Source: Haliotis rubra (Eukaryota). From it: 64,000 nt of DNA. A program made the translations under genes and the position numbers. The notes below the pieces were generated by a model that was not told where the DNA came from, did not search any database, and saw only the letters and a program-made list of their open reading frames with translations. The DNA is taken from positions 7,626,001-7,690,000 of the forward strand of contig NW_025766968.1 in assembly GCF_003918875.1 (NCBI RefSeq). The letters run 5' to 3'. Position 1 is the stretch's first letter; the number at the start of each line of letters is the position of its first letter. Below, in pieces: positions 4,444-59,265 of the stretch.

Positions 4444-4493
<50 letters not shown>

Positions 4494-10571: not shown

Positions 10572-13500
10572 ATGGGATGTGGAACGAGTTTTCCTGTGAT
10601 TCCTCCAGATCGCAATTTAGCATCGACAGTCGAAGAACCCCACCTGCCTGAAGAAAACGATAGCGGGATTTTGGATGCGGACTCCGTTGATGGAGCCATC
10701 GAGTCCAACGGTAACACGGAGTTGGTAGAAGGTACATCTGACATTCAACTGATACAGACCCAAGAGGAACCAGGGTTACCTACTCCTAGCAAACCACTTG
10801 ACCAGACTCCAACCCTATTGTCTACAATGAGTACGGATATACCTCCTTTCAATCAAGACTGTCTGAAGTTAGCTCAGCAGTTAGTCACCAAACATCCTCT
10901 GTTAAAATCCGGGTTTGAAGACATCAACTCCTTAGTAAATGCTCTCGAAGACGACCCCGCTTTGGCGTCAAACGGAGAACAGATTAGGGTGCTCGCACAT
11001 AAGGCAATAGGACTTTCATACGTGAACAAGGATGAGTCCCACAGACAGATATTTGCAGAGTACCTGTCTTACACGCGTGCTGCAGATGCTATATACAAGG
11101 CGTATAGTTTGTATCTTAAAGCCAGGAATCTTGAGTTCTTGACGGATAAAGTAGCTCGAGCACAGCTGACGTCAGAGGGAAGCTACCAATTTGTCCGTGA
11201 TATTAGGGGGTTGTTGTGGAACTACACAGACGCCAGTGTCCAGTTCGGCGAGAGGGTCTGCAACAGTGGCCTCCTGCGATATTTTGTGGGGGACCTGGAG
11301 GCTGTTCTGAAAGAAGCTGGTAGCCCTGACAATGTATGTACCAAGCCTTCAACATTGCATCATAAGAGATCGTTCATAATTTATGGCTGTGTGGTGTGTG
11401 TGGTGGTGTGGTGATGATGAATTTAAGGGGGGTCACCCATTTTGTTCTGGGGAGGTGGGGTGGGGACGGTCATCAATTTTGTACACATGTACTAGAGGTG
11501 GGTGGGGTGGGTTGTGTTTGTACATGACATCCAAGGGGGAAGGGGCACATGGTTCTCCATAAAATCATCATTCTCCAAACCATCTTTATCAAGGGTGTAG
11601 AGAAACAACTGTGGATGTAGTCAAACTGTTGTAATACTGTATGCAATCTTTGTATTATTTTTGTGTGACATACATTAACATGATGTTAAATGTTACTTTG
11701 ATTTATAAGATATGAAGCGAGAGTTTAGGCGATACAGTAGCTACAAGACAAGCAAACAACGATAGGACGAAGTGTATAGCGATGGTTGACAGACTGTAAT
11801 TGCGGAGTGTGGATTAACGGACTGTTTTGAATCTGTGCTATCTATCAAGTGTGGATCTTTGTTGACAAATTATGAATCAAAGCGTGTTGACCAGTTGCGA
11901 ATGCGTTTTAATGATTTTTATTTGTACATCTGCATTTACGACCAACTGTAAATCTTTGTTGAAGATCCATCATTAATAGTTTTTGATGGTTTGTTGCTTC
12001 TGTGAAGATCCGGGTTAGAATTGGTCTTGAGCAACCCATGCTTGTCGTAAGAGGCGTCTTAAAGGATTCGGTGGTCAGGCTCGCTGACTTGGTTGATGCA
12101 TGTGATCGTATCAGAGTTGCGTAGATCGATGCTCATGATGTTGATTACTGGATTGTCTGGTCCAGACCCGTATATTTACTGATCGCCGTCATATATAAAT
12201 GTATATGGAATATTGCTGAGTGCGGCATTCAACAAACAAACAACAATTAATGGTTTGCTGAGTATTTCTAATGACGGCCTGTTGTTCATCCTTGATGTGC
12301 AGGTATCCGTACGTGACTCCTTCTTCCGGTCTGCTAGGGGTGTCCTCCACAACTGCACCAACAACCCCATCACCCGCCAACCTATCAGGGAACTGGGAAC
12401 AGTATCTGTTGCCATGGGCTACCTCAAAGGTGAAGCCCCAGGTGAGTGGCGCCGACAGGAATGAAATACTGCAATATATACAATATATTTCTGTATATGC
12501 TATATCTGTCGACCTATAAATATAGTTAGTAGTGCCATATCCCAAACAAATATCTTTAATTACTCTTGACGTGAAGATCCAAAGAATGAATCGGTATGAA
12601 GAAAGCTGTGGTAGTCGAAAGAAGCAACTAACGGGATCGAGTGGTCAGAGTCGTTGACGTGGTTGATGCATGTGATCGTATTCCAATAGGGCTCGTAAGT
12701 AGGTCACGGTACTTCGCGAGACCTCAGTACTTCCGGTGACAAACAGCGTTTCAAACCTTTTCGATAGGCCTCATGGCTGTCAGGAACCGATAATACTTGC
12801 AGGAATAACAAATTTCCGATCAAGCCATCCCCAAATTAGGCAAGTATTACGACTGTCAACATCTGTCCGGTCTAGTAAACTCATATTTGGCCCTATTGCT
12901 TACACGTTAATCGAGGCTCATGATTATGATAATATAATTTGTCCTCAGACCATAGGAAGTTTCTGTATTTACAATTTGTCCCAAATAGCTTGTGACAAGT
13001 CATAAATCACACCTTCTAAGAAACAAAATGGCAGCATTCTGAGAATGATAAGTTCCAGATTTGCTGGATGGGGTAATATTCTACTAGGCATTTTGATGTT
13101 ACTTCCTAAAATCTTGTACCATGGGACCCGCTTCACAAACCAAGCTATGTACATTTACAAAGTCTATCAGGGGACGTTTGGTTAACCTACAGAGGGGTAC
13201 AATGTGTGAAGCCCATAACTGGTATCCTCCATTATGACACTGCAGAAATAACTAGACGTAAAACTAGACTCACTCACTTCAGAGTCTTTGAATTTTCCAC
13301 CTTTCTTGATTCAACAGAAATTAAAATGATGATTCTTCTGCTGCTGGCGAGCATAATCGACGAGGATGACAATAAAGCTCTTCTAGCAGACAGAACCGTC
13401 TTTACCATAATGTTGAACATGATCTTGTACGCCTGGAGAGATCAACGTCATCGCTGCAACGGCTTCTCTGCGTCTGAGCTGATAGCCGGGCTCACGGGAC

Positions 13501-16500
13501 TGGCGAAGAATGACGACAATAAGAAGATCCTCACAGAGAAGGGAGCGATCAATGTACTAATGACTGTGATGCAGGAAGGATCGGATGATGAGCGAGAGAA
13601 GGCAGTTCAGTGTGTTTGGGAGCTTGCATTCGACAAGGATAATCAACGGATATTTTTGGTAGGTCGTTAAAGTGAAGTCTTATGGGTTCATGATCATGTT
13701 ATGTTATATGCATGTACAAAGAGTGAGAGAGTGAGTTGGGTTTTACGCCGTTTTTAGCAATGTTCCAGCAATATCACGGCGGGGGACACCAGAAATGGGC
13801 GTCACACATTGTACCCATGTGGGGAATCGAACCCGAGCCTTCGGCGTGACGAGCAAACGCTTTAACCACTAGCCTACCCCACCGCCCCGCATGTACAAAG
13901 AGCCTAGCATTTATTGAAAAATGGTTTTCAGTTAATGAATCACCACTTCTTATAGATATGGGGGCGGTGGGGTAGCCCAATGGTTAAAGTGTTTGCTCGT
14001 CACGCCGAAGACCCGGGTTCTATTCCCCACATGGGTACAATCTGTGAAGCCCATTTCTGGTGTCCCACGCCTTTCTATTGCTGGAATATTGATAAAAGCG
14101 ACGTAAAACCATACTCACTCATTCATAAGTCTACGTTCGCCTTAGCGTTAAACAAAACTCACTCTTATAGATATGAGTGTGGGTTAATGAATGTGGTGGG
14201 GTAACCTATATAGCTAGGGGTTAACGTACTTGCTTGTCTCGCCGTAGACCCGGGTTTAATTCCTCACATGGCTACAATGCGTGAAGCCAATTCCTGATGT
14301 CCTCCGGGCGCGATATTGCTTTAACACCGCTCATAGCGATGTCCGTACAAATCAATCATTCAGTCAAATAATTATAATCAAATTATTTTACAATGATTAA
14401 CGATTTCATGTTCTCAAATATGACTGAAATTGACATCCAGTACTGGTTTCATCGTTTATCCATCTTTTAAATAGATCACGATCTTTGGAGTGACGGATGT
14501 GCTTTGTTTTTAAAGAACTACAATAATCTTATTTGTCCCTATTTGTTCTGATGTTTAGTTATGTTTTCAGGAAAACGCTCAACTGATGGCAACACTGAGA
14601 AAACTGAACGGGTCACTAAACAAGAAACTGTCCAAAGTTTCCGGGGGCGCTCTGTGGGCTATCACCCAGGAGGAGAAGAGAGAGAACCAGAGTAAGAGAA
14701 CGTCCATTTTTTACTGGACATTTATTTTTGAAAAACCTATTTCATTTTAACCAGTACAATGAGACAAAACATCGCTTGAAGTTGATCCTCCTCTCACAGA
14801 AACATGCCTGTTTGAAGGAGTTCCTCTTCCCAGAATATTTAATGTTGCGTCCCCACCAAGCATTTTAATGTAATAAAAGGCGATTAAATGTTAAATATTG
14901 ACGACACTTTGACGTCTCCTCCCAAATTTAACTGTCACTGAACTGAAAGATTGTTATGACATGGCACTTTGTAAATTGTTTCTAAAGATTGTATCCCACG
15001 TTCATTTCGAGCAGAATTGAAGAAGAAAGATGTGGCGAAGAAGGACGAAAAGGTGCAGGATGCAGGTCATATTATGATCAGTTATCAGTGGGCGGATCAG
15101 AAAATGCTTATCAAGGTATGTTTCTTGTACTCCGACATGAACCTTGTTAGATATATTCTTCTTATGTCTATAGATCTATACGAGGCTTTGTCTATAATTC
15201 GCTGTGTGGACTGTGTCCATTTGACGTGCAGGAAAGCTTGATCATTGGCTCGTATCCTGGCTATATTTCCACAGCATTTTGGGTTTCAACAAAGTGGTAA
15301 AAATGCTACTTGGGGTTTTCCGTTCCGACACTGAAATACTGCTCAAAGCAGCGTTAAAGCAAACAAATCCGATCTTATTCTTCTAAATAATAAACTTGTC
15401 TTTAAGGTGAAGGAGTTTTTGAAAGGCCACAACTTTAAGGTGTGGATGGACATCGACAACATGGAGGGGTCCACGCTGCAGGCGATGGCGGAAGCCGTTC
15501 AGAACGCCTCTGTGGTGTTGGTGTGTATGTCGGAGAGGTACAAGCTGAGTCAGAACTGCAGGTCAGGTGGGTAGGACAACTACAGTAGTTTCAGTTGTAT
15601 TACAGGCCGATATGAATGGCCCATTTAACACAATATTCACACCAGTAGTGGTTAAACAGTTAGAGGTGTGAAGGATCAGTGGCACTGCATTCAGCAGTTC
15701 TTGAATTGTCTCAGGACACTTGCGACTTGGTCGACACATCGTATCCAAAATGCATCTTCTTTCAGGGGCATTTTAGAAGTTTTAAAGATGAAGGAAAACC
15801 AAGTTGTATGGATTGTCAACTTCTTTATTGCAATGAATGCGACGTTTCGGTGTAGGTACTCACACCGTTGTCAAGCAGGTGCTTCAGCAAGTGTTGGACA
15901 ACGGTGTAAGTACCTGCACCGAAATGTCGTATTCATTGCATATGACATAGGTTTCCGTCATCACTGGATTGTCTGTTCCCGACTTGATTATTTGCAGATA
16001 GCTGGAATAACAACAAATAAACAAACAAGCTCTTGCGAAGGTTTCATGCGTCGCACACTGTGCATGTCTTAGCCGTCCCAGTAACCAGTGTTCATGGGTT
16101 CGAATCCCAAATTGTTCCTGATTCAGTATATCGATTTTTTCAGAACTATACCTGGCAAGGTTACCGAGGAGGCAAACAACGTAAACAGGTTTTGTCACAA
16201 TCAAGCTGACATACTGTAAAACTTAAATACTTACACAAACTTTAAATCCAGCTCACTCGTACCCAGTTTCGTACATACAGACCGGTTTGTGACAAATAAC
16301 AATCTGGATGATAAGACGTCCATATTACAGTTGTAGACGACATGTCTGCCCAATATCTGACAGCTTTAGCAAGCACGTGATCATGGAACAAGTCACTTCC
16401 GGTTCAACCCACAAAGGAGAGTTAATTCTAAACTTATCCTCGAATGGACATTATTTTTCTAATCCTAAAGGGACCATATCTTTCGATCATATCTTTAAAG

Positions 16501-18620
16501 GGACAGTTACCTCCAATCTAATCCTTGAAGGGATAGTTACTTCCGGTGTAATTCTTCAAGAGACTGTTATTTTCCGATATAACCTGACTGGGTGATTAGG
16601 GACATTTTCAACTTATATTTCAATTTTTGAGCCCTGTTCCATGTCACCCTTAGTCTCAGATTAGCAGGAGACCCTGAAAGTAAAGTAAATCCTCCATCCT
16701 CACTCAGTCAGTTTTGAAAAACAAAACAAATATGGGCTCACAAAAACAACAGTTCTTTGACCTCCTAGCTTACTTTGCCTCCATGTACGGTGATACAGAA
16801 CTATACCTAAGAGGATTTGCTGGAAACATTTTATCACATAGAACCTGACTCAAGCGATTTTACATTACAGAAGCTGAGTATGCCTTTGACCTCAGGAAGC
16901 CCATAATACCCCTTCTTCTACAGAGAGACTACAAGCCCGATGGCTTTCTGGGATTGATCAAAGGGGCAAAACTCTTCTTCGACTTCAGCGGAAAATACCC
17001 TTTCGAAAAGAAAGCTTCGGAGTTGGTGAAGGAACTTGGTGCTCGAGGCAAGGCAGGGTCGTCAGCCGATAGTATTGACGTGAGTGACAACATTTCTGTC
17101 CAGTCAGATTCGTACGTGAAACACCTATGTCCTTAAACGAGCTTTACTGGTGTGTTTTTCATCTGACAATAGCTTTTCAGCGGATTTATATCTCAAATGA
17201 TACATAGCAACGGTAATGCCATCGTTTTCTCGAACATAAACAATATCTCGTGGGTATAAAGGCGAAGTGTGAAAAAGCAGCGATTTTGACGTACTGGGAA
17301 AACTGTAGTCATACCAACCTCGATTTAAGAATCCCTGGGACAAAGAATTAATCTTTGTTTAGGTAGAACCTTCGAACTGCACTCTGAAGGAGAAAAAGAA
17401 ACGTCATCTTTGTTATTTACGAATGATATAATACCACATTTAAAAATATATTCAGTAACAACGGATACACCGTTTTCAGTATCTTTCAAGTTTTTTTAAA
17501 GAATATCACTCTAAAACAATGATTCTGTTACTACAGATATTGGTTAATCAGGGCGAATTCCCTTGATTGGTACCGTCAGGATTAACGAGATTTCCCTTTA
17601 CTCAGCGTCTTTATGAATATCTCATTGTTACAGGTTTCTTCCAAATTGTTTCAGGGGGAGACAACTGCAGTTGTGAAGTCCCAACCGTCTGATGCTGGTC
17701 GGGGCGCGAGTGGTACAGCCAACTGGTCACAAAAAGATGTCCAAAACTGGCTTTGTAAACTGAACTTGGAAAAGTAAGTATCTGATAAACATTTGACAAT
17801 GGGAACAAGTTTCATCGTAGTCGTCTTATCAATTGACGGAGCTCTATGCTTCAGATTAGTGAGATATTTGAATGTTAATTTTGATTCAAGAGTTGCGGCC
17901 CTTACCTGTGTGAGGACTTGCTGTTGTTGAATCACCTTATAGTGTTTTCAGTGGTCATATCAAACATTTGTCTCACACAGTGCTGTCCAAGACTGTTACA
18001 CTTAGTGTTTTTTCAGTTTTACAACCACCATGAACGAGTTGAGGGACTTTGTCGCTGTTGGAGTGGAACAAAGTCACTGAGATGAAAGCATGATGTATGT
18101 TGAATTTGTCCAGGTTCAGAATATTTCTGCTCCCTTATTCAGTGATCGTTTTTCAGACATTCTTCGCTGAAAGGTCTCACCGGAAAGCAGTTGATGTTTC
18201 TTCATAAGATATCGTACAAGGTAAACAAGTGGATACTTCAAAGTGGCTGTATATATTCATAATATCACATCACGATTCTTCACGAATCAAATTCGGGATA
18301 ATTAAATTTAGTATAAAGTTTTCCAATCCTCTCTTTATGTGTCTTGACTTTGTTAATCCAAACGAAAAAAGAATTGTTTAAGGGTTCATTTTTAGCGTTC
18401 TGGTTGATAATGGTTAAAAGGATATGGTCACTTACTTTTGAATATGAGCACTGACTAAAGCAGATATTCAGAATTTCACAGGGTTCAATTACTGCTCAGC
18501 GATAAAATTCTCTTTTGTTTACAGGCACCAGAATTCTTCTACAATTACATCAAAAATGACCTGAAGTTGAGCAGTCTGGAAGATCTGATGATCTTCAGTG
18601 AGGCTGTGGAGAATTTGTAA
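10572..18620 (+). CDS. Paralog A: myristoylation-motif ARM-repeat / TIR / SAM-like protein, 703 aa, 10 coding exons
   Basis: Exons 10572-11333, 12303-12441, 13318-13658, 14571-14691, 15015-15115, 15407-15566, 16871-17079, 17655-17773, 18157-18220, 18525-18620 (TAA). All introns GT-AG, phases 0,1,0,1,0,1,0,2,0; 2112 nt open. Starts MGCGTS. ARM-like motifs LLWNYTD, GVLHNCT, GLTGLAKNDDNKK, AVQCVWELAF, GALW. TIR GHIMISYQW..VWMDID..VVLVCMSERYKLSQNCRSEAEYA..IIPLLLQ. SAM-like WSQKDVQNWL..LTGKQLMFL..APEFF. Confidence 0.93.
11362..11580. mobile_element. MITE-like element in intron 1 of gene A
   Basis: TIR-like TAAGAGATCGTTCATAATTTATGGC; body GGGGGGTCACCCATTTTGTTCTGGGGAG shared with 26944-27072. Confidence 0.6.
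12001..12245 (+). mobile_element. Family-2 short retroposon, near full length
   Basis: GTGAAGATCCGGGTTAGAATTGGTCTT..CCCATGCTTGTCGTAAGAGGCG..GGAATATTGCTGAGTGCGGC and (AAAC)n tail. Confidence 0.85.
13724..13888 (-). mobile_element. Family-1 tRNA-SINE
   Basis: Full length; 14-bp TSD GCATGTACAAAGAG at 13710-13723 and 13889-13902. Confidence 0.92.
13961..14163 (+). mobile_element. Family-1 tRNA-SINE (a degenerate copy follows at ~14195-14360)
   Basis: GGGGCGGTGGGGTAGCC..GGTTCTATTCCCC; TSD CTTATAGATATG at 13949-13960 and 14164-14175. Confidence 0.9.
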
Positions 18621-25957: not shown

Positions 25958-28900
25958 ATGGGCAGTTCAAGTAGCGCGTCAAGGCCACCACGCAGTGTTT
26001 CCCACAAAGACCCCAGAAGTCCCATCCGACATTCAAGACATGACGCGGGAACCATGGAAACAGCCGCTAGCGACGACAAGACACAGACGATGGATCTTCT
26101 ACTTCCAGCATATAACGAAGATGACGTCAAAACGGCCCAGAACCTGCAGAAAGACCACCCAGAGTTGTTCTATGTGTTTGAAAAAATGCACGCACTTGTA
26201 GAGAAGCTAGAAGAGAATCAAAAGTCCCAATGGCAGTGGATTGAACTCGAGGAAAGTATTGAATCCAGCATGGAAAGTTCATATTTTGATCATTATGAAA
26301 AGAAGCGGATTTTGGGGAGGTACATGGCCTTGCTTCGAGCTGCAAATCCCTTTACCGAGGCATATGGTGATGCACTTGGTGAAGCCGGTCTCACAGCATT
26401 CACTGCCAGAACTGTTAAATCCCACGCAGCAGATGCGCCTCTTGGGTTCCTCGTCACGCTGAGATCAGTGTTGCTGAACTATACTGATTCCAGTTTATAC
26501 TTCTGTGAAAAACTTGCTGATAGTGGTATCTTCAAATATTTTGTTGACGATCTAAAGCAATCCCGTGAACATGTGGCGGACTTCGATGATGTGAGTATAT
26601 ATTCTCTGTTGTATGTTCTCAGCTTTCAATATTCTAAAACATCTAGTATATTTCACCTTGATCACATGAACTTTACAGATTTACGTTTAACATATTGTTG
26701 TAGTGAAGTAACATTGAGATCCTATCCAGCAAGACACCAGCAAAACCACATGATAAACACCAGTTTAAATACTATCAACTAAAACCGGACTGAACTTGTG
26801 TTTTTGTGGACTAAGGNNNNNNNNNNNNNNNNNNNNNNNNNNNNNNNNNNNNNNNNNNNNNNNNNNNNNNNNNNNNNNNNNNNNNNNNNNNNNNNNNNNN
26901 NNNNNNNNNNNNNNNNNNNNNNNNNNNNNNNNNNNNNNNNNNNNGGGGGGTCACCCATTTTGTTCTGGGGAGCTGGGGGGTCATCAATTTTGTACACACG
27001 TACTGGGTGTGTGTGTGTCTCCATAAAAATCATCATCACCCCCCCTAGCCATAAACCATGAACGGTCCCTAATTCAAACGTCAATTATTCAAGAGGCAAT
27101 GAGATTTCCGGTCTTTACATCTCTTGAAATGGGGTTGAGTATTACCGTAACACTTCTCACACTGGTAAAGCTGATTCAGCCGTTGTCTAACAACTTTCAC
27201 ATCTCTCTGTAAGGGGGCCGACGATTGTTTTGTCGCTTCCATTGGGGTGCTGTACAACTCTGCCCGAAATCCTGCCATCAGACAGACTTTAAGGAACCTG
27301 GACACCGTGTCTGTTCTCTTGCCATTCCTTAAATCCAAATCCGAAAGTAGGTATTGGTGCTTTTTGTTTCTCAGTTATCCTCCTGTAAATATGAACTCAT
27401 TATCACACATTTTTAAAGATGATGTCATCCGTTGGTTATGACTTCACTAAGATTTAATTAACGTCTTCCTAACAATTTCTCCAGTGAAAGCAGAAAATAA
27501 ATACTTCGGATAATATAAAGAATAACAATAACATACGACCTATGCAGAATCACAGTTACTTTAATGAACATTATGAATTTTCGTTGACATCTCTCTCCAA
27601 GGATCGTTGTTTACAACATCATTTCACTCGGGAGAGATAATCCGTACCTGTCATTCTCTGGGTATATTGTATGGCAATTACGTCCATGTTTACAACGTCT
27701 CACTTCTTGTGTTGCAGAGGTGCGGATGTTGGTTCTTCTCAGTCTCGCTAATATGTTGGATGAAGACCAAAACGACCTTCTTTTGGCTGATGATTCTGTG
27801 TTTGACTTCATTCTGTTTGTATTGGATCGAGCCTGGAAATATTCAAATCATCGATTCGATGGCTTCAGTGTTGAAGAATTGATAGATGGAATGACAGGGT
27901 TGGCCAAGAATGACTCCAACAAGACTCTGCTGGTGAAGAAGGGGGTGTTGCCAAAGATGATGCTTGTGATAAAGAACAGCAGCAGTGGTGAGGAGATCGA
28001 GAAGGCTGTCAAGTGTGTTTGGGAACTGTCTTTTAACGAAGAGAACAGGAAAGATTTCAATGTATGTACCATTCGGGTGTTGGGTGTTGAACGGGAAACT
28101 TGATTCATAAACAATTTTTTGAGGTCGTCAGAACCTTTGGATTGGAGAGTAAGGGTTTTGCAAACGTACCTCTATTTTCAGAACAGTTCAGCCTTTATTA
28201 AATTTATCCTTTGTTTAGATATATAATTGTTTTAAGAACTAACATATGCCTACGTTGTGTTGACTGCCAAGACACAGGAGTCAGTACATGAATCGCCAGG
28301 CAGTAGGAGAGTAGGAGCAGGAGATGGGGCCCGGGTTCCCCGCCAATGTATTCCTTGAAGATACAAACGAAGTCATGTCATACTCAGGCATGCCCTGTTA
28401 CTAGGATTATTGGGAATCCAAATCCAATTGTGTCCTCTGCATTTAAAGGTTACGAATGCATTTGTACGATGTGATCATTGACTAAAGTCTAGAACTCGTT
28501 GTTCTTACTCGTATATGATTTACAAACGAGCATGAAAAGTCATGAGATAGCCATTGAATATAAATTAATCAAAAGATTGTTTGAACTTCATGATCCTTTT
28601 ACAGGAAAACAAGGAGCTAATGGATTTACTAAGGAAGTGTAAGAATTCCTCGGATAAGGCCGTCGCCAAAGCAGCAGAAGGAGCTCTTTGGGTTCTGCAG
28701 ATGAAGACAAAAGACGGTATGATGCACTATAATAGTACCCCCTTCCCCTTTAGTGTGGTAAATGTACCGCGCACCTACCGCTGTGGTAAACCGAAGCTTC
28801 CGTATGAAATGTATGGGGCAAACAGTGCCCACCCGTCGATAAAATTACAAATCACTCACAGTCACGGTTTATATCTATCGTTATCTATGTCACCATATCG

Positions 28901-31900
28901 CAGTATCAGTTTGTGGATAGTCTTGTTTGCTCTGTGAAGAATTTACTATGCATCACTGCCATTTGCATATCACGTGATCGGGCTTTTCTCCTCGTGGGGA
29001 TCCTCCCATTACGCAGACAGGCAGTTCGCAGACACCTTAAAACAACAACATTTACAGATAAGTTGCTACCTGTTACCTACACATTATAATGGGATAGTCC
29101 AAATAAAAACAGAAAAAAACTGGAGCTATATTATTTACTTTGAAAGATGACGGAAAATACATGTCATTAATTTGAATTCTGATTGCTGCAACATAAAAAC
29201 TGTTGATTTTCGTAAACATTTGGGTTTAACGTTCTCATCATTATTATATTGAAAACATTGTCAAAAACCCATCTAAAATGATTGGAGCATTTCAGAAATT
29301 AAAGTTCTTACTAAATAGAACAACACCAGGTTTTCTTCAGGATTTACTGCCACCTGTAGTAGGCAACCGGACAAGCTATGAGTTAAGAAGTTCCAATAAT
29401 TTCTAGCTAACCATGTACAAGACTGAGGCACTCAACATCATCTTTTTTTCCACCAGCAGTTAAAATGTGGAATAATATTCCCTTAGCTATCAGAAATTGC
29501 GACTCTGATGCATCACTTAAATCTTGTGTCCACATGAAAGAAAAATGTACACCTAAATATTATTCATATGGAATAAGAAGGTTAAATGTTTTGCACACAA
29601 GATTAAGATATAAGATATATGCACTTAATTATGATTTATTTAGAATAAATATAACAATATGACGCATCATGTCAACGTGGCCATGGATGTGAGAATGTTT
29701 AACATTACTTCCTTGAATGTCCATTGTATACTATTCAAAGACATAAACTGTTACAATCTTTAGAAAGTGTTGTTAAAATTAGAACACTGATTGGTATTAA
29801 TCTTATCTTTCATGGCAATGCAGGTCTCTCAGTTACTGACAATCAGAATGTTTTCAAATATGTACATATCTATATCTCTCAAACAAATCGTTTTCTCGGT
29901 TAACTTTTGTTGTACATATTCTGTTATTGGGAGAGGGCTTTTCTAAGTAGGAAAACTTGTGCCCAATCCTTTTCTCGAATGAATAACATATGTTTCAATC
30001 AATAAACACAATCAAACCTCTCAGTGACAAACCTGTTTTTATATTCGATAATAATTGATAGTAAAAACAATTTGGAGAAGAGAAGACAGATTATCATTTG
30101 ATCACAACAAAAGTCTATTTACACACAATCAAACTTCTCAGTAACGAACCTGTATGGGCTCACCCTACTCTACTCACCATGGGAGGACTGTTCCATTATA
30201 CCCGTAGGTGTTACCCTAATTAACCTACTAGTTCAGTGTCTTTCAATCGACTGTCTGTCAAATGGGTGTATGTCAATTGGGAGATAACCTCCTCGTGCAA
30301 ACAAGCCACCATTACGGAAATTTGAGCAGGTCTTGCTAATGGCCAAGCGTGGTTTACTGATTACAGATATTTCGCGACACTCGCATGCCAATGACCGTAT
30401 TGTTTGCTTTCGAAAGAGTACGATATGGAAGCACACAGCCTGTGTAAACAAAGAACACATCTAACATTTGAAACAATATGTTCACGTTTCATATGCCGTC
30501 AATGAAATTAACCTATTCATGATAAATGTTAGTCTAAATGTGGCGACCTTTCAGAAACACGATTGATGACAATCATAGTTTATTGAATGGATTGAGAAGA
30601 CCTGACGAATCGTCACATTTCCTTGACTGGTCCCAGTGGCACTAGCTTGACTGCCAGGATCTCTGGGTGGAAGAGCGGAACATTATTGTGAACAGTACTG
30701 TAATTCAGTCGATCAGATATGTGGATTGTAAGGATTAGTAGATTCTTCAAACAATGTAATATTTCTTAGATCGTGGTTGTTTTATTTACCCCAGAAAACA
30801 AGAAAAATCTCAAAGAAGACAAGAAAGACATATCCGGTCACGTGATGATTAGTTACAACTGGGGCGACCAGAAGACGCTTCTCCAGGCAAGTAGGGGTAA
30901 TTCTTGCGGATCGTCATGTTCATGACGTAGAACCGTCTTAACATACATAGGCGGATCCATAGGGAGGGTGCAGGGGTGCGCAACCCCACCCCACCTTTTG
31001 TACAGAAAGTTTATTAAAAGACCATTGAAACTCGAGAGAAAATGGGTAAAAATGAACTGTGCACCCCCCATCCCCTTTCTGAACTGCCCTATCCCCCTTT
31101 TTTCCAAAAACTGTATCCGCCCCTGACATGGTAAACTACCGTATTTCTCCATTTATTTTATCAACGGACTTTCAGACCCGGCGCTTATTGCGCTTACTGG
31201 GTGTAATTAATATGACTAAAGGGACCATTCCATAATAAATCTACTTCTTTATCAAGGGAGAATACATTTATGAAAAAACCGTACCCGCCGCTTATTAGAG
31301 TCTCGGCGCTTTTTAGAGGAAATAGGGTACATATAACATCAACAGGTGCCCAATATACAATGTACAGCTCATCTAACGGATAGGATTCGATTGGGTGTAA
31401 AACGCAAATTAGGTGAAAATGTGCACTTGTGAATGGATCACTGAACCTTAACGAGGACATCATGTATTACCGACAACAGTAACCAACTAACTGGTCAAGT
31501 TCATTTTAGCAGGGGGTAGAACAGGTCAGATCAGTGTATTACCATTAACTTCACTTTCTTATCACTGGACCGTATCATGTTGTTTTAACCTGTAGGCAGT
31601 TTGGAACTGTAGGCAGTATGGGAATACACCGGCGTCTTGTCCTATCTGTAGCACCCGTCTCGGTTAGGGATACAACAGCGCTTGGAATACACGCTTGATG
31701 GTCACAATTGCCATTTATGGTTCGTGTGTGTGTGTGTGTGTGTGCGTGCGTGCCGAACTTTGATGTGTGTGTGTGTAGTGCTATTTCAAATGAAGAATTC
31801 TAAAAGTTAAGCGTTCATCTTATCATATGTCGAAATGACATTGTTTTCAGCGAATATATTGATAGTTCTAATACGAAAAAATATCGTTGTCAACTTGTAC

Positions 31901-34900
31901 ATGCTTTCTACCAGGTGAAGGAACTACTGAAGGCTGACGGTTATAATATTTGGATGGACGTCGACAACATGGGAGGGTCCACACTGCAGGCGATGGCGGA
32001 GGCCGTTCAGAACGCTTCTGTGGTGTTGGTGTGTATGTCGGAGAGATACAAAGAGAGCCAAAACTGTAGATCAGGTAAACTGTCACAGAACGGATGTATA
32101 AATTTGTTTGTTTGTTGTCGCTAAGCAATATCCCAGCTATATGGCGGCGGTCTGTAATTAACCGAGACTGGACCAGACAATCCAGTGATCAGCATCATGA
32201 GCATCAATCCACGCAAATGGGACATGTCAGCGAGCCTGACCACCCGATCTCATTAGTTGCCTCTTACGACAAGCATGGATTGCTGGGGTGAGGTGAGGTG
32301 AAATTGGGGTTAACGTCGTGCTTGAGAATATTTCGCTCATATGACGACTTGCATGCGTGTGTATGTGTATGTGTGTGCGGCTGCTTGTACTAGCCCAGAC
32401 TTAAGCTGGTTTTATAGTGCTAGCCCACTGAGATACCATGCCGCAGTGAAGCATGAATACCCCACTCAGACACATTATACTGACTCCGAGCCGACCAGTC
32501 CTTGTTGTACCCATTAATGCCGATCGCCAGGCAGGGACCAACAAGTACCATATTTTAACGTCTTTTGGTATGACGCGGCCGGGGATCGAACCCGCGACCT
32601 TCCGCTCTCCGGGCGGACGCTCTAACCACTACACCACAGAGGCGGTCGGTGTGGATTGCTGAAGACCAATAGTAACTCGGATCTTCTCTACAGTGTGCGA
32701 AATAGTTTTCGAAGTTTGCTAGTCAGTCGGGCTAGCGATGCCTGAAAGTTACTAGCAGACAAGTGGACACGGGTTTCATAATTTAGCTGCTAATATGATG
32801 AACATTTTTATCAGGCCATAATCTTGTATGTTTTTTAAAGTGTATTATATCTTAAAAAGTCGGAGAGAGTGATATATTTACAAAATGACCCTAATGAAAA
32901 TTCACTAGCCAGTCGGACTAGTGACTGTGGAGATTTACAGGCCCGACTGGATTTTTACTAGCCACGAGCTAGCGGGTCAGTGGCTATTTCGCACACTGCT
33001 TCACGGGTTTATAACTTTGTACTCGTTGATATATCGACAACTGTATAGTATGGGAAAATATACATAGGAGCAAATCAACCCTTCGAAGAGTTGTTATAGA
33101 GGTATAGAATGATTGAGTGGTTAAGTTTTCATTGTTCTTACGTTATTGCCTAAATAAACAAGTTTAATCATAAATAAAATGAAAGTGGATGCTTGATTTA
33201 AGGTACAGAAGGATGCTTTCTACATGTAGGTTGCATTCAGATGTCCCTTGACAATTCTAACATTATTACCTTCAGACGTTGTAATCGACATTTGCCCATG
33301 TAATTTACTCTGGCATATACCTACACAATAACCGTTAATCGCGTTAATCCCTGTAGCCAGGCACACATTGACAGCGATCAGATAATCTGTTATTCCGAGG
33401 TTATTCTTCATATGACTCATAATATTATATATTTTTGAGAACTAAATGCAGAACCAATGTGTGAAAGGTCAGCCGTACAGAGATCCATCACTGACGTTAG
33501 CCTATTTGTCCTATGTTAGCGGTGCTTGATATATACTGAGAGAGAAAAATAAAGGATGACAGGGAAATTTACGCGTTCTTTAATATTTTTCCAGTTTTCA
33601 TCACCAGCTTTGAATAGCGCTGTGGTGATGAAAACTGGAAAATAATAAAAGGAACGCTTGAATTTTCCTGTGATCCTTTATTTGTTTCTCTGGTGTCCTC
33701 CAATTACGCAGACAGCCAGTTCGCAGACACCTTAAAACAACAACATTTATGGTTCAGTGAACAGATTATCTCCTACCTGTTACCTACATATTATAATGGA
33801 ATAGTCTGCAAATCAGAATGTTTTCAAATATGTACCTATCTATATCTCTCCAACAAAACGTTTTCTCAGTTAACTTCAGTTGTACATATGCTATTATTGG
33901 GAGGGGTCTTATCTATCAATAAACACAATCAAACCTCTCAGTGACAAACCTGTCTTTATATTCGATAGTAATTGATAGTAAAATCAATTTTCAGAAGAGA
34001 AATCATTTATCATTTAATCACACCAAAGTTCTATTTACCCACAATCAAACTTCTCAGCAACGAACCTGTTTCAGGCTGACCCTGCTCTACTCACTAGACA
34101 GTGGACTGTTCCATTATACCCGTAGGTGTTACCCTAATTAACCTTCTAGTTCAGTGTCTGTCAATTGGGTGTCTGTCAATTGGCAGATAACCGTTTCTCT
34201 CAGTATATTTCCACCTGTATATGTAACTACATGCTCTTGTAACCAGGCTTGGTGGAGTAACCTCGTGGTTAAAGCGTTGGCTCGTCACGCCGAGGGCCCG
34301 GGTTCGATTCCCCACATGGGTGCAGTATGTGAAGCTCATTTCTGGTGTCCCCCGCCGTGATATTTCTGGAATATTGCTAAAAGCGGCGTAAAACCCAACT
34401 CACTCACACAGTAACACCAAAAATGGGTACAGGGTGTGAAGCCAATTTCTGGTGTCCCCCGCCGGGATCTTGCTGTTATATTGCGGCGTAAAACTAAACT
34501 CACTCATTCTGACATTATCAGAAATATTTCCCTTTCTTCTCCAGAGGCAGAGTACGCATTCTCGCTACAGAAGACCATCATCCCCTTATTGATGCAGAGG
34601 GAGTATAAGCCAGATGGTTGGTTAGGGATGATAAAAGGAACCAAGCTTTTCTTCGACTTCAGCGGAAAATACGACTTTAATAAGAAGTTGATAGAACTCA
34701 GCAGAGAGTTAGGAGAGAGAGGCAAGGGTCTTGAAGCTGATGCTGTTGATGTAAGTTTCTTGGTTGTTTATGAGAACATAGCTTATTTTGTTTCTGTTAA
34801 ACAGTGAATCAGTTGTCTAATGAGTAACTGTCGGAGTAACAGGAAGACTACGCTGTATATTCTCATTCGATATACATGTGCATGATACAAAGTTCCTGTA

Positions 34901-37900
34901 TAGAATAGAATTAATATTATTGGTCATAACGGTAGTTATTTAAATAGCAAACAACGCTTTGCATGATCCCAGCTAGTGATTATTATGTTTTCGTTCCCCT
35001 AAAGTTGTTCTTTAGATCGTTTAGTACGCAAATGTACTCAACAAAAAGTTAGGAATCATGAATATTTTTATGAAAACGTATGTTCAGTTTTAACAAAACA
35101 TACTAAAAAAATTATGTACTATGCTTTCTGTTTTCTGTATTACATATACAGTTAATTTGATCCCGTTCGTTAGAAATCTCTTTATTAGGACGATATAGTT
35201 TTTATGAACATAATTTCATTATTACAAACACGATTACAAGAAAATATCATATCACGTAATTTAGCCTGTTTTGATTACATTCAGCTAAAGTATAGCGTTA
35301 TTAGAATTGACAACACTGTCTGCCACTGAATTTTTATGGTGCATATCTGTTTCAGTAAACCGTCCGTATTAGGACTGAAGGTTTTGTTGTACTTGTTCAG
35401 GAGGGGCGGTGGGGTAGCCTAGTGGTTAAAGCGTTGGGTCGTCACGCCATAGACCCGGGTTCGAATCCCTTCATGGGTACAATGTGTGAAGCCCATTTCT
35501 GGTGTCCCCCGCCGTGATGTTGCTGGAATATTGCTAAAAGCGGCGTAAAACCAAACTCAGTCAGTCAGTCTTGTTCAGGACCAGGTATTATTTCATAGAG
35601 ATGTGACGACAGGCAGGAATCCATGAAACAAATAAACGATATTTCTTAATAACGGTAACCATTGTACGTTGTTCCGTCAGGGTGAGGTGAGGACGACCGC
35701 TCCCGTCCTGAAAGCCGCAGCTGTGGACGCAGCAAGAGGCCCAACAACTGCCGCTTGGTCCAACAAAGACGTGCACAACTGGCTAGTGAAGTCCGGCCTC
35801 AACAGGTACATCGACTGTCATGTCTACATTAGGGCTTAATGCGATTGGTTACACAAACCTATGCTTGTGTTTTCGAATTTAGCTTTACTCTTATTATATT
35901 TCTATGTTTGCCAACATCATTCCGTTTGCTCGTTGGTTCACTAAACTGGTAAACTTCTAAGGCCCTTTCCACTTCCTCATTGAGCTAATAGGGTTGGTGG
36001 GGTAAATTAGTGGTGAAAGTGTATGCTCGTCACGCTGAAGACCCGGGTTCGATTCCCCAGATAGGTACAATGAGTGAAGCCCGTGATATTGCTGGAATAT
36101 TGATAAAAGCGGCGTAAAACCATAATCTCTCATTGAACTGGCATGCTGTGACCTGACTGAAATACTCTCCTAAGTGTATGTCCAAATATATTCAAATGGC
36201 ATTAAAATATCTCCGTTAGTTTTGTTGTTTGTATTCATAAACGGTTCAATAACGCGGGGAACTGTCTCACATGGCAAACATTATTCCACTCCCTATTCTG
36301 GAGTTGTCGACCAGAGTAGACAATTGACGAGTCACCCGTCTCTGCGTTCTACTGGGTCAACAGGTTTATATATGTATACAGTTTGTACCGAGTAATGGTT
36401 CTGGAGTAGTTTGCCCGAAGTGTTGTGTTGTGTTGTGTTGTGTTGTGTTGTGAATAGACTTTGTTGGGCGGATTCTTGTTGGCGTATGGTTTCATCTGTG
36501 GACCTTAACTCATTAAGCCCGAGAGACGCTTCACTACTCAACACCTGGAACCCTTCGCTAATTGCCCTGCTCGCTGTTGCGAGGCTAATTAGTGCTATTC
36601 ACACCTGATTTCCCTGGTAGGTTTCGGGGATGACAGGAAACTGTCTAGTCGTACAATCAAGCTCTGATTGTTTAATTGTGTCGTAAACATGTAAGTTAAA
36701 AGAAAGCATGGAAAGAAAGCTTGGATAGAGATTGATTATTGGCTATATCGTTGACCAGTCGATATGCTGGGTTTCGGCGTTATCAACTCAAGCTATTATG
36801 TAACAGTTTGTGTATTATAAACATACATACTCGTAACGATCCATGAAATATACACATAAGACAAATAGGAGTAGATAGATCTCAGAGATCGAAAACACAT
36901 TTGAGTGTTTTTCGATAAGTAAAACAAAGAGATTGAAATCCAACCATTGAGTAGAGATAGTATTTATTTTCATATACATTTTACGCACACAACTAGTACA
37001 TAAACATAATGGTTTGCTGTACATGTAAACATAATCTTCACCATGAAACGAATGAATATCCAAATTAAAGTACACGTATTATAGAATTCAAAAAGTGACA
37101 CGATACTGAATAATTATAATGCATAAACTTGCAGTTTAATCCCCCAAATATTTATGAAGATGGGCGTGCCTATATTCATACTGAATGTAAACGAGGTTCA
37201 TAAGAATACAGATGTGCATTTATGCATAAACATTACAAAGAGGGGCGTAAAGCAGGTTGTCCAATGACATAACATCGCATCTGTTTATTTTACACTTATC
37301 ACGGGACAAACCTTTCAACAAGGGCGTAACTACATATGCATTCTACCGGAGGCTGTTATTTCAAGGTCGAAAGAGATGTTCAGTTATCTCATTACTGTAA
37401 TCTGATTGAATGATTATACGCATGTGTATCGATACTGTAACTGATATACTATCCTGCTTTTACTGACGATGGATCAATAGAGACTGAGTTCATTGATACA
37501 CGTGATAATTACACCGGATCAGATAATTACAGAGATCAAATACAAAAGTTTTTACACAATGCTCATGTAAATTGCATAGAAAACTGACAATTCAAATCAA
37601 CATGAAATTTTCAACAGCTTGAACAAAAATGCTTGAAATACCTTTGTACGGTTTACATGTCATAACTTATGATATTATTTCTGTCTATGAGTAAGAATCT
37701 TTTGAATTACCAACTTACTGTTTTTTGTTGTATTTGTTTCATTGTTGTATTAACACTGACATGTATATATATTCGATGCGAGTTATCACTTTATATTCGA
37801 TTAGGTAACATTATCAACTTTAGATTATGAAAAATAAATAGTTACAATTCAGTAAGCTTTAAATTAGTAACTTATGTCTAATCTATTCGAGCTTGGATAT

Positions 37901-45410: not shown

Positions 45411-48400
45411 ATGGGCAGTACAAGCAGCATGCAGAGGCCTCCTCCTCGCAAAACTGCTGATGCAGCAAATTCTAGCCCAGGCGATACTCGTAATCAACCG
45501 GTGAATAACCTATCTAAAACACAGTCTGATCGAGGAGGAACTGATATCACTCAGAAACCAGCAGTAAACTCTGTACCTTCTGGCGTGGATACGGAGGCTG
45601 AAATGAAGAAACTGCGGGAAGATGCTTCACATTTAAATTCGGAATTTGACGAAATTGACACTCTTATTCAAGAACTTAAAGCTGATGCTTTCACGAAGAC
45701 TGGGAAATATTCAAGGATCTACAACTGGAGATCTCTGGGCTTCGAGGACTACGCTGATACGGACCGTCGTAAGCTCGGTGAATACTTAGCGGTATCTGAC
45801 GCTGCTGAAGTGCTGAATGCAGCATTTGACACACTGCTGAAATCACTTGGGTTTACATGTATGTGGCCTATAAAGATGGACTTTGAAGACAAGACGCAGG
45901 TTCTTGTTGCTCAAAAGTTATCCATGATACGAATGATTGTGTGGAACAATACGGATGGTAGTCTCAGTTTTGCTGAAAAGGTGAGCAAAGCTGGGATGCT
46001 TAAATATTTCGTGGAAGATTTAAAACAGATGGATGTGGAAGATGCCGCCGCCGCTGATGACGATGATGAAGATGATGACGAGGTCAGTGAGATATTTACA
46101 CACACTCAATGAATGGGAAAGCGTTCATTTCAAAGAAGCATGCATATATATATGCCCCTCATTTTCCATAAATATTGTTGTTCTTACGTAGGCTATCAAT
46201 TTCGTGTCAATGCAATATTACGCCGCTTTTAGTAATATTCCAGAAATATCACGGCGGGTTTCACACATTGTACCCATTGTACCACTAGGCTACCCAGCCG
46301 CCCCCTTTTCAACAGGGCATGCATACTTATAGCAAAAAATCCCGCCGTAATTGTCATGATATATAAATTCCGCAGCCCAAATAGACATTTTGAAGTCCAG
46401 TTATAATCCCACGTTGCAAGTAGAATGTTCTCTCACACACTAAAGTCTCTCAAACATTCATTTAGTCCATTCAGGAGATAATTGTAAATGCACGTAATCA
46501 TACGAGCCATGGCCTTCCAAAAATTGTACACTGAGCTGATGTTGTGTATAATATTCGACGGGAATACACGTTTTACGAAGACTTGTCTATAAATAATCGA
46601 GTCTTGACCAGACAAAAACAGTGAATGTTATTTGTAGGAACGTCCCTTGTCATGCTTGGGATGACTTAATACTCAATCAGTTTAAAACTGAACAGATGGA
46701 AGATGAACACAACGTCAGTTAGACGTAACCGTGAACATTTTGTCAATGTATGTTGCAGGAGCTTGACAACACATTTGAAGCGGCCATTTCCATCCTCCAG
46801 AACTGCTCAAGGAACCCTGCGACCAGACAACATCTTCGGGAACTCGGGACAGTTTCCGTCCTGCTGCCGTATCTCAAGTGCAGGTCAGATGGTAAATATT
46901 ACACATCTGTTTGCGAACACGTTCTTGAAGAAATAGCTTTTGAGAATTCCAGTGGACATCGGATACCACTCATTGTGAACGATGAACAATATTGTCAATA
47001 TTGTTCCTCTCTTTTACTCCTCCCTCGTAACAAATCAGTGAACTCAGCAATGTGTTTGCCGTATTTTAGAATGATAGTTTGCTAAACATGGTTCTATGTT
47101 TATTGTTAGGACATAGATTTTCATTACAAAAATGATAGAGTTGGTTTGATACATTTTATTATGATCAGCGTTTCGTTGAGAATATATGTTTGCTTAGAGA
47201 AGCGAGTTAGATGATAATTCATAGAGTCCCTATTGACTAACACCAAAACGGACTCTATAATCTTACTCGTCTACACAGCACCTGATAATTGCTTCCGGTC
47301 AGGGTTTAAATCGTGATTAAAGAATGGATCTGAACTGGATGGTCAGCTCACAGGAACGTAATCATGTTGGCCAAACATGGATCGACTGCCTTTCTCTTTG
47401 CTTAACAATCAATTATTTACATTACATAAAAATGAATGAGCATTCACATGGGTAGATTCATACAAAAGTATGTGTTCAATGTTAATAATGAGAATACCTC
47501 AAGAAGCGAGATTGTGATAATTATAGAGAAATCCTATTCGACTAACACCAACAACAGATACTGATTTACACTCGTCTATAGGATTGTTCATCTTTCAATT
47601 GCTTATTAACTGTTGTACATGTCCAACGTCTTTTGTATAATAGATAAGTTATATTCCAGTTAACACAATGTGATGTTCATGGTGACACTAATTATGTTGA
47701 TAGTATTAATAACGATGCGGACCCTTGAGAGTCATGACTTACGTCGATTGTTCCAGAGGGTAAGCTGCAGACTCTGTTTACTCTTGCCAACATCGTGGAC
47801 GAAACCGAAAGTGAACATCTTCTGGCTGACAAAACCGTGATTGATCAATTGTTCGATATACTGAAGGAAGCATGGGCGATTGAGGAACACCGCTATATTG
47901 GTTTCAGTGTGGAGGAGATAGTGGATGGGATGACTGGTCTAGCCAAAAATGACACCAACAAGAAGGTCCTGTGGGAAAAGGGAGCCGTTCCTATACTTAC
48001 AGAGATTATGAAATTTGGATCGGACGAAGAGAAAGAGTATGCCGTGAAATGTATATGGGAACTGTCTTTTGATAAAACTAACAAGGAAATATTCAATGTA
48101 AGTTCCTTGGAAGTGGATTGTTTGGTTTTTGAGATTCGAGTAAATGCTTCATTTGCCACTTTCATTTCTCATGGTTCAGAACTAAATATATTATATTTTT
48201 TAAGTGGATTACATAATCATTGATATGCGTTGTTTCTTCTGGCCATAAAATATTTTTAATATTTATTACTACACGTCCGTCATTAGTATAAAAGAAGGAA
48301 GGATTCCCCACTGCGGAAAATTGTCAGCCGTATGTTTGGCCAGGTATTGTACTGACAAGACACTTGCGTGACATGCCCTCTATACTTCGTAGTCTGTGTA

Positions 48401-59221: not shown

Positions 59222-59265
<44 letters not shown>

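What the first reader, a model, noticed from the sequence alone, without database searches (positions are those of the whole stretch)
15061..17040. TIR domains retain the enzymatic signature in all four paralogs
Seen: H(I/V)MISY (betaA), (V/I)WMD(I/V)D (betaB), a BB-loop Gly, VVLVCMS (betaC) and SQNCRSE-AEYA (alphaC). Established: the Glu of the S-x-W-C-x-x-E motif in plant and bacterial TIRs, and E642 of SARM1, is catalytic for NAD+ hydrolysis. Inference: these are enzymatic rather than adaptor TIRs. Asn replaces the usual Trp four residues before the Glu, which may change the product (ADPR versus cyclic ADPR variants).
Basis: partly seen in the sequence, partly recalled or inferred. Interest (0 to 1): 0.75.

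Follow-up and report, generated by a model that had tools for sequence, protein, structure and literature searches.

The report
Abalone ARM-TIR-SAM genes keep catalytic glutamate
Four neighbouring abalone genes encode armadillo-TIR-SAM proteins whose TIR domains keep the glutamate that NAD-cleaving TIR enzymes need, but this holds for their whole widespread family, is already catalogued in a 2026 preprint, and no family member has yet shown activity.

Summary
Window 15061-17040 covers exons 5-7 of a 10-exon Haliotis rubra gene (RefSeq XP_046574454.1, "uncharacterized"). All four paralogues in the window carry HxMISY, xWMDxD, a BB-loop Gly, VVLVCMS and SQNCRS-E-AEYA. The Glu codon is split by a phase-1 intron, and spliced RNA contigs confirm that junction.

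The proteins read: N-terminal MGxxxS/T (a myristoylation-type motif), canonical armadillo repeats, TIR, one SAM.

Profile alignment puts Glu542 on the catalytic Glu of Cat1, RPS4 and TIR-1/SARM1. The beta-A Ser and the BB-loop Gly are also kept.

The claim "enzymatic, not adaptor" is only partly supported:
- Asn replaces the aromatic residue at -4, which published mutagenesis shows is needed for cyclisation and often for activity.
- The fold matches adaptor TIRs as well as enzymatic ones.
- The family spans molluscs, brachiopod, flatworm, amphioxus, tunicate, fish and green algae. Hurieva et al. 2026 already list it as Glu-bearing.
- In that study four family TIRs expressed alone in E. coli showed no activity, though the authors state limits that make this weak evidence.

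It is not a SARM1 orthologue. This is an ordinary new member of a known but unstudied family.

The parts
10572..18620 (+). Gene A (LOC124282490, 703 aa), 10 exons: 10572-11333, 12303-12441, 13318-13658, 14571-14691, 15015-15115, 15407-15566, 16871-17079, 17655-17773, 18157-18220, 18525-18620
   Evidence: Model. It is identical to P0003 = XP_046574454.1. Spliced contigs confirm 5 junctions.
15015..15115 (+). A exon 5: start of TIR, betaA GHIMISY. Ser477 codon at 15080-15082.
   Evidence: Ser aligns to the FISY Ser of TIR-1/SARM1. 48/48 conserved.
15407..15566 (+). A exon 6: betaB VWMDID, BB-loop Gly509 (15467-15469), alphaB, betaC VVLVCMS, start of alphaC SQNCRS. Asn538 at 15554-15556. The last base, 15566, is the first base of the Glu542 codon.
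   Evidence: Pfam TIR_2 34.4 bits on this exon alone..
16871..17079 (+). A exon 7: 16871-16872 complete the Glu542 codon (G|AA). Then AEYAF..., betaD, alphaD, betaE, alphaE of the TIR.
   Evidence: Joint 15566>16871 seen in runs X1 and X2.
17655..18620 (+). A exons 8-10 (17655-17773, 18157-18220, 18525-18620): linker and single C-terminal SAM domain
   Evidence: Pfam SAM_3 23 bits. The PDB profile hits are nearly all SAM domains. AF2 pLDDT 94.7, with nearly all structural hits being SAM domains.
25958..40348 (+). Gene B (655 aa). TIR exons 30795-30886, 31915-32074, 34545-34750. Glu codon 32074 | 34545-34546.
   Evidence: Orthologue P0004 from H. rufescens.
45411..51384 (+). Gene C (667 aa). 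TIR exons 49191-49282, 49458-49617, 49729-49937. Glu codon 49617 | 49729-49730.
54116..60088 (-). Gene D (661 aa), inverted copy of C. TIR exons 56305-56214, 56038-55879, 55768-55560. Glu codon 55879 | 55768-55767.
   Evidence: Arms about 96% identical.

Best explanation
The interval is the TIR-coding part (exons 5-7) of gene A. Gene A is one of four intact paralogues in the window (A, B, and the inverted pair C/D) in Haliotis rubra. Each encodes an N-terminal Met-Gly-x-x-x-Ser/Thr motif, a disordered stretch, canonical armadillo repeats, a TIR_2-type TIR domain and a single C-terminal SAM domain. They belong to an old, widespread and functionally unstudied family.

Shown here:
- gene structure and intact frames for all four genes, and splicing of gene A transcripts;
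- the TIR and SAM folds;
- near-invariance in the family of the pocket residues Ser477, Gly509, Ser536 and Glu542;
- near-invariance of Asn538 where enzymatic cyclising TIRs carry Trp, Tyr or Phe.

Inferred mechanism: the protein is a latent NAD+-cleaving enzyme. A lipid anchor holds it on a membrane, and it is switched on when SAM-mediated and/or ARM-ligand-mediated clustering brings TIR domains together, so that the BB loop of one TIR completes the active site of the next, as in SARM1 and AbTir. Because the -4 aromatic residue is missing, the expected product is linear ADP-ribose plus nicotinamide (NAD+ depletion) rather than a cyclic ADPR isomer. Activity, product, lipidation and oligomerisation are all untested.
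For: - TIR_2 scores 77 bits.
- The AF2 model has pLDDT 86.9 with Glu76 in alphaC.
- The family profile hits enzymatic TIRs first: Cat1 at 1.9e-9, RPS4 at 2.5e-4, TIR-1 at 5e-4, SARM1 at 6e-3, against MyD88 at 0.15 and TLR1 at 0.27. In those alignments the family Glu lies on their catalytic Glu and the family Asn on their -4 Trp.
- Conservation in family representatives: Glu 95/97, Ser(-6) 92/93, BB-loop Gly 79/88, beta-A Ser 48/48.
- A 39-residue core is identical between paralogues that are only 45-50% identical overall.
- Other copies in the same genome keep the same Glu junction.
- The orthologue's Glu493 was placed at the catalytic position by an independent structural alignment.
- The C-terminal domain is a SAM fold nearest to polymer-forming SAMs: Shank, DGK-delta and SARM1.
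- MG(S/C)xx(S/T) N-termini recur across the family.
- A Latimeria TIR with Asn at -4 (SRNCKKE) depletes NAD+ without a cyclic product (Table S4 row 145).
- The alphaC aromatic residue is required for cyclisation.
Against: - Four TIRs of the same 40%-identity cluster (Chlamydomonas, Branchiostoma, Lepisosteus, Phallusia) gave no cyclic ADPR isomer and are not marked active when expressed alone in E. coli.
- Trp-to-Ala at the -4 position abolished NADase in L6 and ROQ1 and reduced it in AbTir, so Asn could mean no activity at all.
- The Glu is kept in most non-TLR animal TIRs, and most of those tested were inactive. In TLR2 and IL-1R9/10 the Glu points away from the pocket. I could not check side-chain orientation here.
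- The fold search does not separate enzymes from adaptors: Hydra TRR-2 Z 17.9, MyD88 Z 16.4, SARM1 Z 16.9.
- SAM self-association got no verdict from the complex predictor.
Confidence: 0.45

Rival explanations
1. Non-catalytic scaffold or adaptor. The TIR only mediates TIR-TIR assembly in a membrane-proximal signalling complex. The ARM repeats bind partners and the SAM polymerises. The Glu-Ala-Glu-Tyr helix is conserved for structural or interface reasons.
For: - Four of four tested family TIRs were inactive.
- The -4 aromatic residue needed for activity in plant TIRs is absent.
- Adaptor TIRs (MyD88, Hydra TRR-2, IL-1RAcPb) are equally good structural matches.
- A Glu at this position exists in TIRs with no detectable activity.
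Against: - Near-invariance of Glu together with the pocket Ser and the BB-loop Gly from green algae to chordates is hard to explain by an interface alone.
- Sequence-profile similarity is highest to enzymatic TIRs.
- The negative assays used isolated domains, and the authors state that such assays miss oligomerisation-dependent activity. RUN1, RPS4 and RPP1 control domains also show no activity in that table.
Confidence: 0.3
2. An enzyme with another substrate or product than those assayed so far. Examples are NADP+, NAD-capped RNA (decapping), base exchange, ADPR-conjugates, or 2',3'-cNMP synthetase activity on nucleic acids. The Asn538 pocket would be tuned for that chemistry.
For: - The pocket residues are conserved, but the residue that stacks on the nicotinamide or base is consistently Asn (80/93), which suggests a specific and selected difference.
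- Hurieva et al. state that several known TIR products were not measured.
- TIR NAD-RNA decapping and cNMP synthetase activities are described in the literature (titles).
Against: There is no direct evidence for any alternative substrate. The Latimeria TIR with Asn at -4 simply depletes NAD+.
Confidence: 0.15
3. Domain-permuted SARM1 orthologue or derivative: the same three modules inherited from SARM1 and rearranged.
For: ARM, SAM and TIR modules all occur. Foldseek ranks the human SARM1 TIR first by E-value, and SARM1 SAM domains are among the SAM hits.
Against: - The order is ARM-TIR-SAM with one SAM, not ARM-SAM-SAM-TIR.
- The ARM profile hits Vac8, beta-catenin and designed ARM proteins (down to 7e-30), and SARM1 is not among the 60 hits shown.
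- The TIR lacks the SARM1 insertion before alphaC and the DWVHKE motif.
- TIR sequence similarity is higher to Cat1 and RPS4 than to SARM1.
Confidence: 0.05

Closest known systems
ARM-TIR(-SAM) family catalogued as TIR cluster 'A0A0B7AZE4_1' in Hurieva et al. 2026 (bioRxiv 10.64898/2026.04.20.719644); the 'ARM-TIR' class of mollusc immunome surveys (PMC9334734)
   Same: - The TIR motif is the same: HxMISYxW ... WMDxxxMxGSTLxAMAEAV ... YKxSxNCRxEAEY ... PDGWLG.
- The armadillo (TPR-clan) region lies upstream.
- Glu is recorded at the catalytic position.
- The Lingula member A0A1S3HGA3 is P0006. It is 65% identical to the TIR of gene A and has the same MG...ARM-TIR-SAM layout.
   Different: Nothing essential; these are the abalone members. 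New here are the exact gene models, the split Glu codon, the four-gene cluster with an inverted pair, and the explicit N-myristoylation-type motif and SAM assignment.
SARM1 / C. elegans TIR-1 (NAD+ hydrolase)
   Same: - TIR fold: Z 16.9, rmsd 2.1 A over 123 residues.
- The catalytic-position Glu, the beta-A Ser (Ser567 equivalent) and the BB-loop Gly.
- ARM and SAM modules are present.
- Likely control by oligomerisation.
   Different: - Different domain order, with a single SAM.
- The ARM is the canonical Vac8/beta-catenin type.
- Asn instead of Trp638 at -4, and no insertion before alphaC.
- A lipid-anchor motif instead of a mitochondrial targeting sequence.
- Activity is unproven.
Bacterial and plant enzymatic TIRs (Cat1, AbTir, RPS4/L6/ROQ1)
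   Same: Best sequence-profile matches. The S-x-[W]-C-x-x-E helix aligns residue for residue.
   Different: Those carry Trp at -4, which is needed for cyclic products and for activity in L6 and ROQ1. This family has Asn.
Vac8 (yeast N-myristoylated and palmitoylated armadillo protein)
   Same: Top natural ARM match (5.7e-24). The statement that Vac8 has an N-terminal Met-Gly acylation motif like MGCG/MGSxxS here comes from my own knowledge and was not tested.
   Different: Vac8 has no TIR or SAM. The resemblance is limited to the ARM solenoid and the anchor motif.

Membership tests
TIR domain (Pfam TIR_2, PF13676) | Profile match above the curated threshold, and a flavodoxin-like alpha/beta TIR fold | tested here: met
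   77 bits against a cut-off of 28. AF2 pLDDT 86.9. Z up to 17.9 to solved TIRs.
Catalytic (NAD+-cleaving) TIR | Glu in alphaC at the catalytic position | tested here: met
   The profile alignment places Glu542 on the catalytic Glu of Cat1, RPS4 and TIR-1. Glu in 95/97 family members. Orthologue structural alignment 0.53 A in Hurieva Table S2. Side-chain orientation was not checked.
Catalytic (NAD+-cleaving) TIR | Beta-A Ser next to the Glu (SARM1 Ser567 / SNC1 Ser26) and a BB-loop Gly (SARM1 G601) | tested here: met
   Ser477 aligns to the FISY Ser, 48/48 conserved. Gly509 is conserved in 79/88.
Catalytic (NAD+-cleaving) TIR | Aromatic residue (Trp, less often Tyr or Phe) four residues before the Glu | tested here: not met
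   Asn538 in all four paralogues. Asn in 80/93 family members and Tyr in only 2. The role of the aromatic residue is described in Manik et al..
Catalytic (NAD+-cleaving) TIR | Glu-dependent consumption of NAD+ | not testable with these tools
   Literature only: four TIRs of the same cluster were inactive as isolated domains in E. coli, with the caveats stated by the authors.
SARM1 orthologue | Architecture ARM-SAM-SAM-TIR | tested here: not met
   The order is ARM-TIR-SAM with one SAM.
SARM1 orthologue | SARM1-type ARM (allosteric NMN/NAD+ site) and a TIR with the C-x-D-W-V-H-K-E helix | tested here: not met
   The ARM profile hits Vac8, beta-catenin and designed ARM proteins, and SARM1 is not among the 60 hits shown. 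The TIR has S-x-N-C-R-x-E and lacks the insertion.
ARM-TIR(-SAM) family (cluster A0A0B7AZE4_1) | TIR at least 40% identical to cluster members, with an armadillo region upstream | tested here: met
   45-73% TIR identity to 38 family representatives, including A0A1S3HGA3. ARM region confirmed.
SAM domain | Five-helix SAM fold and profile match | tested here: met
   SAM_3 23.0 bits against 22.6 on the isolated domain, and 14/19 family members hit SAM_3. The PDB profile hits are mostly SAM domains. AF2 pLDDT 94.7. Nearly all the structural hits are SAM domains, TM 0.6-0.68, though Foldseek E-values are weak.

The most novel reading that the evidence does not exclude
The N-acylated ARM-TIR-SAM family is a second executor of NAD+ depletion in animals, evolved independently of SARM1. 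It would be membrane-tethered and silent as a monomer, which would explain the negative isolated-domain assays. SAM polymerisation or ARM-ligand binding would switch it on. The family-specific Asn at -4 would make it a pure hydrolase, or give it a product not yet described. The fourfold local expansion in abalone, about 13 copies genome-wide, would then reflect immune diversification of the sensing ARM part around a frozen catalytic core.
Probability: 0.25. Interest if true: 0.6.

Novelty: new member of a known kind. Interest (0 to 1): 0.3.

Why it matters
If the family is enzymatic, it would add a widespread membrane-anchored NAD+-cleaving module to invertebrate, lower-chordate and green-algal cell-death or immune signalling. 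It would also be a natural test of what the -4 aromatic residue does in TIR chemistry.

As it stands, the finding restates a family-level property already tabulated in a 2026 preprint, for genes already in RefSeq. Its practical value is a clean set of four verified gene models and a specific prediction: a Glu542-dependent, non-cyclising activity that needs clustering.

Tried and rejected
- phmmer of exon 6 alone against the PDB found nothing useful. A family profile was needed.
- The word-index protein search was not used. Its length filter cannot reach about 700-aa proteins from exon-sized references, and spliced sequences cannot be referenced. The exhaustive representative search with an exon-7 profile was used instead.
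- Complex prediction on two copies of the SAM domain returned no verdict (score 0.02). This is neither support for nor evidence against self-association.
- Residue-level 3D superposition on SARM1 E642 could not be done, because the fold tools return only ranges. I relied on the HMM alignments and on the published structural alignment of the orthologue.
- My first exon boundaries for introns 2, 3, 7 and 9 of gene A were wrong. I corrected them by comparing splice positions between the paralogues.
- The 'permuted SARM1' reading was considered and rejected.
- Two attempts to count residues at each position failed on alignment parsing (apart from the Ser477 count). The count is the valid one.
Full report
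**What is there.** The window is animal DNA with short exons, GT-AG introns and many SINE-like repeats. Translating 14900-17300 shows three exon pieces that join into one TIR domain:
- ...DAGHIMISYQWADQKMLIK
- VKEFLKGHNFKVWMDIDNMEGSTLQAMAEAVQNASVVLVCMSERYKLSQNCRS
- (E)AEYAFDLRKPIIPLL...ELG

The Glu codon is split by a phase-1 intron, with G at 15566 and AA at 16871-16872. A tblastn search with this TIR finds four copies in the window, each with the same three-exon layout.

**Gene models.** I compared the paralogues with tblastx and required shared splice positions and phases. This gave complete 10-exon models for all four genes:
- A: 10572-18620, + strand, 703 aa
- B: 25958-40348, + strand, 655 aa
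- C: 45411-51384, + strand, 667 aa
- D: 60088-54116, - strand, 661 aa

All frames are open. The exhaustive protein search then returned P0003, which is identical to my model A. It is RefSeq XP_046574454.1, 'uncharacterized protein LOC124282490 [Haliotis rubra]'. The genome is 1.38 Gb.

Contigs of four small runs from one study lie on exons only. They carry the joints 14691>15015, 15115>15407, 15566>16871, 17079>17655 and 17773>18157, all GT..AG. So gene A is transcribed and spliced as modelled, and the Glu codon is assembled on the mRNA.

**Architecture.** Each protein begins MG(C/S)xx(S/T/G), an N-myristoylation-type motif. Gene A has Cys3, a possible palmitoylation site. A low-complexity stretch follows, and then armadillo repeats. 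The family ARM profile hits Vac8, beta-catenin and designed ARM proteins down to 7e-30, and SARM1 is not among the 60 hits shown. Next comes the TIR (Pfam TIR_2, 77 bits, residues 474-593 of A), followed by a short linker and a single SAM domain. The SAM assignment rests on several results:
- SAM_3 scores 23 bits on the isolated piece, and 14 of 19 family members hit it.
- The PDB profile hits are mostly SAM domains.
- The AF2 model has pLDDT 94.7.
- Nearly all structural neighbours are SAM domains: Shank, SARM1 SAM1-2 and DGK-delta, with TM 0.6-0.68 but weak E-values.

**Is the Glu the catalytic one?** I searched the PDB with a 39-sequence family profile (A2). The best hits were enzymatic TIRs: Cat1 at 1.9e-9, RPS4 at 2.5e-4, C. 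elegans TIR-1 at 5e-4 and human SARM1 at about 6e-3. Adaptor TIRs scored worse, with MyD88 at 0.15 and TLR1 at 0.27.

In the printed alignments the family string s-p-n-c-r-a-E lies on S-D-W-C-W-D-E of Cat1, on S-V-W-C-V-R-E of RPS4 and on ...H-K-E of TIR-1. TIR-1 HKE corresponds to SARM1 H640-K641-E642; compare the SARM1 sequence and catalytic residue number in Hurieva Table S4. The family Ser of MISY lies on the FISY Ser (SARM1 Ser567). That residue sits 2.6 A from the catalytic Glu and is required for activity.

Counts in family representatives are Glu 95/97, Ser(-6) 92/93, BB-loop Gly 79/88 and beta-A Ser 48/48. The other family copies in this genome keep the same Glu junction.

Independently, Hurieva et al. 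2026 list the Lingula orthologue A0A1S3HGA3, which is my P0006, with 'GLU 493' at the catalytic position and an aligned C-alpha distance of 0.53 A. Residue 493 is the Glu of NCRT-E-AEYSF. I could not run a residue-level 3D superposition myself or check the side-chain direction.

**What argues against 'enzymatic'.**
1. The residue four positions before the Glu is Asn in all four paralogues and in 80/93 family members. Manik et al. 2022 showed that this alphaC aromatic residue (AbTir W204) stacks on the base of the NAD+ mimic and is required for cyclisation. L6 W131A and ROQ1 W82A lose NADase activity altogether.
2. Keeping the Glu is the rule, not the exception, for non-TLR animal TIRs. Only 12 of 61 Glu-bearing animal TIRs made a detectable product.
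3. Four TIRs of this family's cluster were tested and none is marked active (Table S4 rows 149-152, header, rows). They came from Chlamydomonas, Branchiostoma lanceolatum, Lepisosteus and Phallusia. The Branchiostoma one clearly shares the motifs of gene A.
4. By structure, adaptor TIRs match as well as enzymes: Hydra TRR-2 Z 17.9, SPARTA 17.9, SARM1 16.9, MyD88 16.4.

The negative assays are weak evidence. They used isolated domains in E. coli, the LC-MS protocol targeted the three cyclic isomers, and the authors stress that oligomerisation-dependent activity would be missed. The RUN1, RPS4 and RPP1 control domains also show no activity in that table. A Latimeria TIR with Asn at -4 (SRNCKKE) depleted NAD+ without any cyclic product (row 145).

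**Most likely mechanism.** My preferred reading (0.45) is a latent NAD+ hydrolase that is anchored to a membrane and activated by clustering through the SAM domain and/or ARM ligands. It would give ADPR rather than cyclic ADPR. A pure scaffold role (0.3) and a different substrate or product (0.15) remain open. A rearranged SARM1 is unlikely (0.05). The module order differs, there is one SAM, the ARM is of the canonical type, and the TIR is closer in sequence to Cat1 and RPS4 than to SARM1.

**Family and novelty.** The exon-7 profile finds 1873 cluster representatives at E<=1e-3 and 520 at E<=1e-10. Named members come from:
- abalones, Aplysia, Nucella and Gigantopelta;
- bivalves: Dreissena, Sinanodonta, Pinctada, Argopecten and Mytilus;
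- Lingula, Macrostomum and Branchiostoma.

The preprint's cluster also holds tunicate, gar and green-algal members. All are annotated as uncharacterised or as 'TIR domain-containing'. 'ARM-TIR' is a recognised class in mollusc immunome surveys. I found no functional study of this family. So these genes are new members of a known but unstudied kind, and the specific point of the finding, that the Glu is retained, is already in the literature at family level.

**Local evolution.** A, B and C/D are 45-50% identical overall. C and D are 96.5% identical and lie in an inverted duplication. A 39-codon core (GSTLQ...AEYAF) is identical in protein between A and C, and it shows fewer synonymous differences than the rest: 0.15-0.37 of identical-residue codons, against 0.58-0.62 in the N-terminal/ARM region. 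This is compatible with gene conversion or with very strong constraint.

Noticed in passing
window 45342-60157: Genes C and D lie tail to tail in an inverted duplication of about 7.4 kb per arm. The arms are about 96% identical and meet near 52710-52800 with almost no spacer. This could be a real palindrome or a fold-back assembly of two haplotypes.
   Followed up: partly
window 15467-16887 (codons for GSTLQ...AEYAF in A) and the equivalent stretches in B, C and D: The 39-codon TIR core has far fewer synonymous differences between the old paralogues than the flanks do (A against C: 6 of 39 codons, nucleotide identity 0.95 against 0.48-0.69 elsewhere). This suggests gene conversion or constraint at the nucleotide level.
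   Followed up: partly
window 16946-16947: All four RNA-derived contig sets read GG where the assembly has TT. This changes Phe566 (KPDGFLG) to Trp, the residue that is nearly invariant in the family (KPDGWLG). It is either an allele or strain difference, or an assembly error in gene A.
   Followed up: no
window 30886-30887: Intron 5 of gene B starts with GC instead of GT (CTCCAG|gcaagt), giving a GC-AG intron. The other 35 introns in the four models are GT-AG.
   Followed up: no
window 14691-15018: Run X2 shows an alternative joint, 14691>15018, with the three letters AAC in between, instead of 14691>15015. This is a possible allele or alternative acceptor at exon 5 of gene A.
   Followed up: no
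G000 contig C720 (loci L010, L011, L015; also 123407-123613): A second cluster or haplotig holds two C/D-like copies in direct orientation, one A-like copy (81% identity in exon 7) and one copy with an in-frame stop. Further family copies lie on C2345, C2506, C746 (two), C2556 and C2412, making about 13-14 in the genome.
   Followed up: partly
window 13700-14130, 4490-4690, 9440-9580, 40550-44300 and elsewhere: A short interspersed repeat recurs many times on both strands within the introns and intergenic DNA of the cluster. In translation it reads ...FTPLLAIFQQYHGGGHQKWASHIVPMWGIEPGP....
   Followed up: no
whole genome G000: At least 150 TIR_2 matches, many in long single-exon open frames of 700-1200 aa. 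This points to a very large TIR repertoire in this abalone.
   Followed up: no
window 26817-26944: An assembly gap (N run) lies inside intron 1 of gene B. It does not touch coding sequence and was left as is.
   Followed up: no
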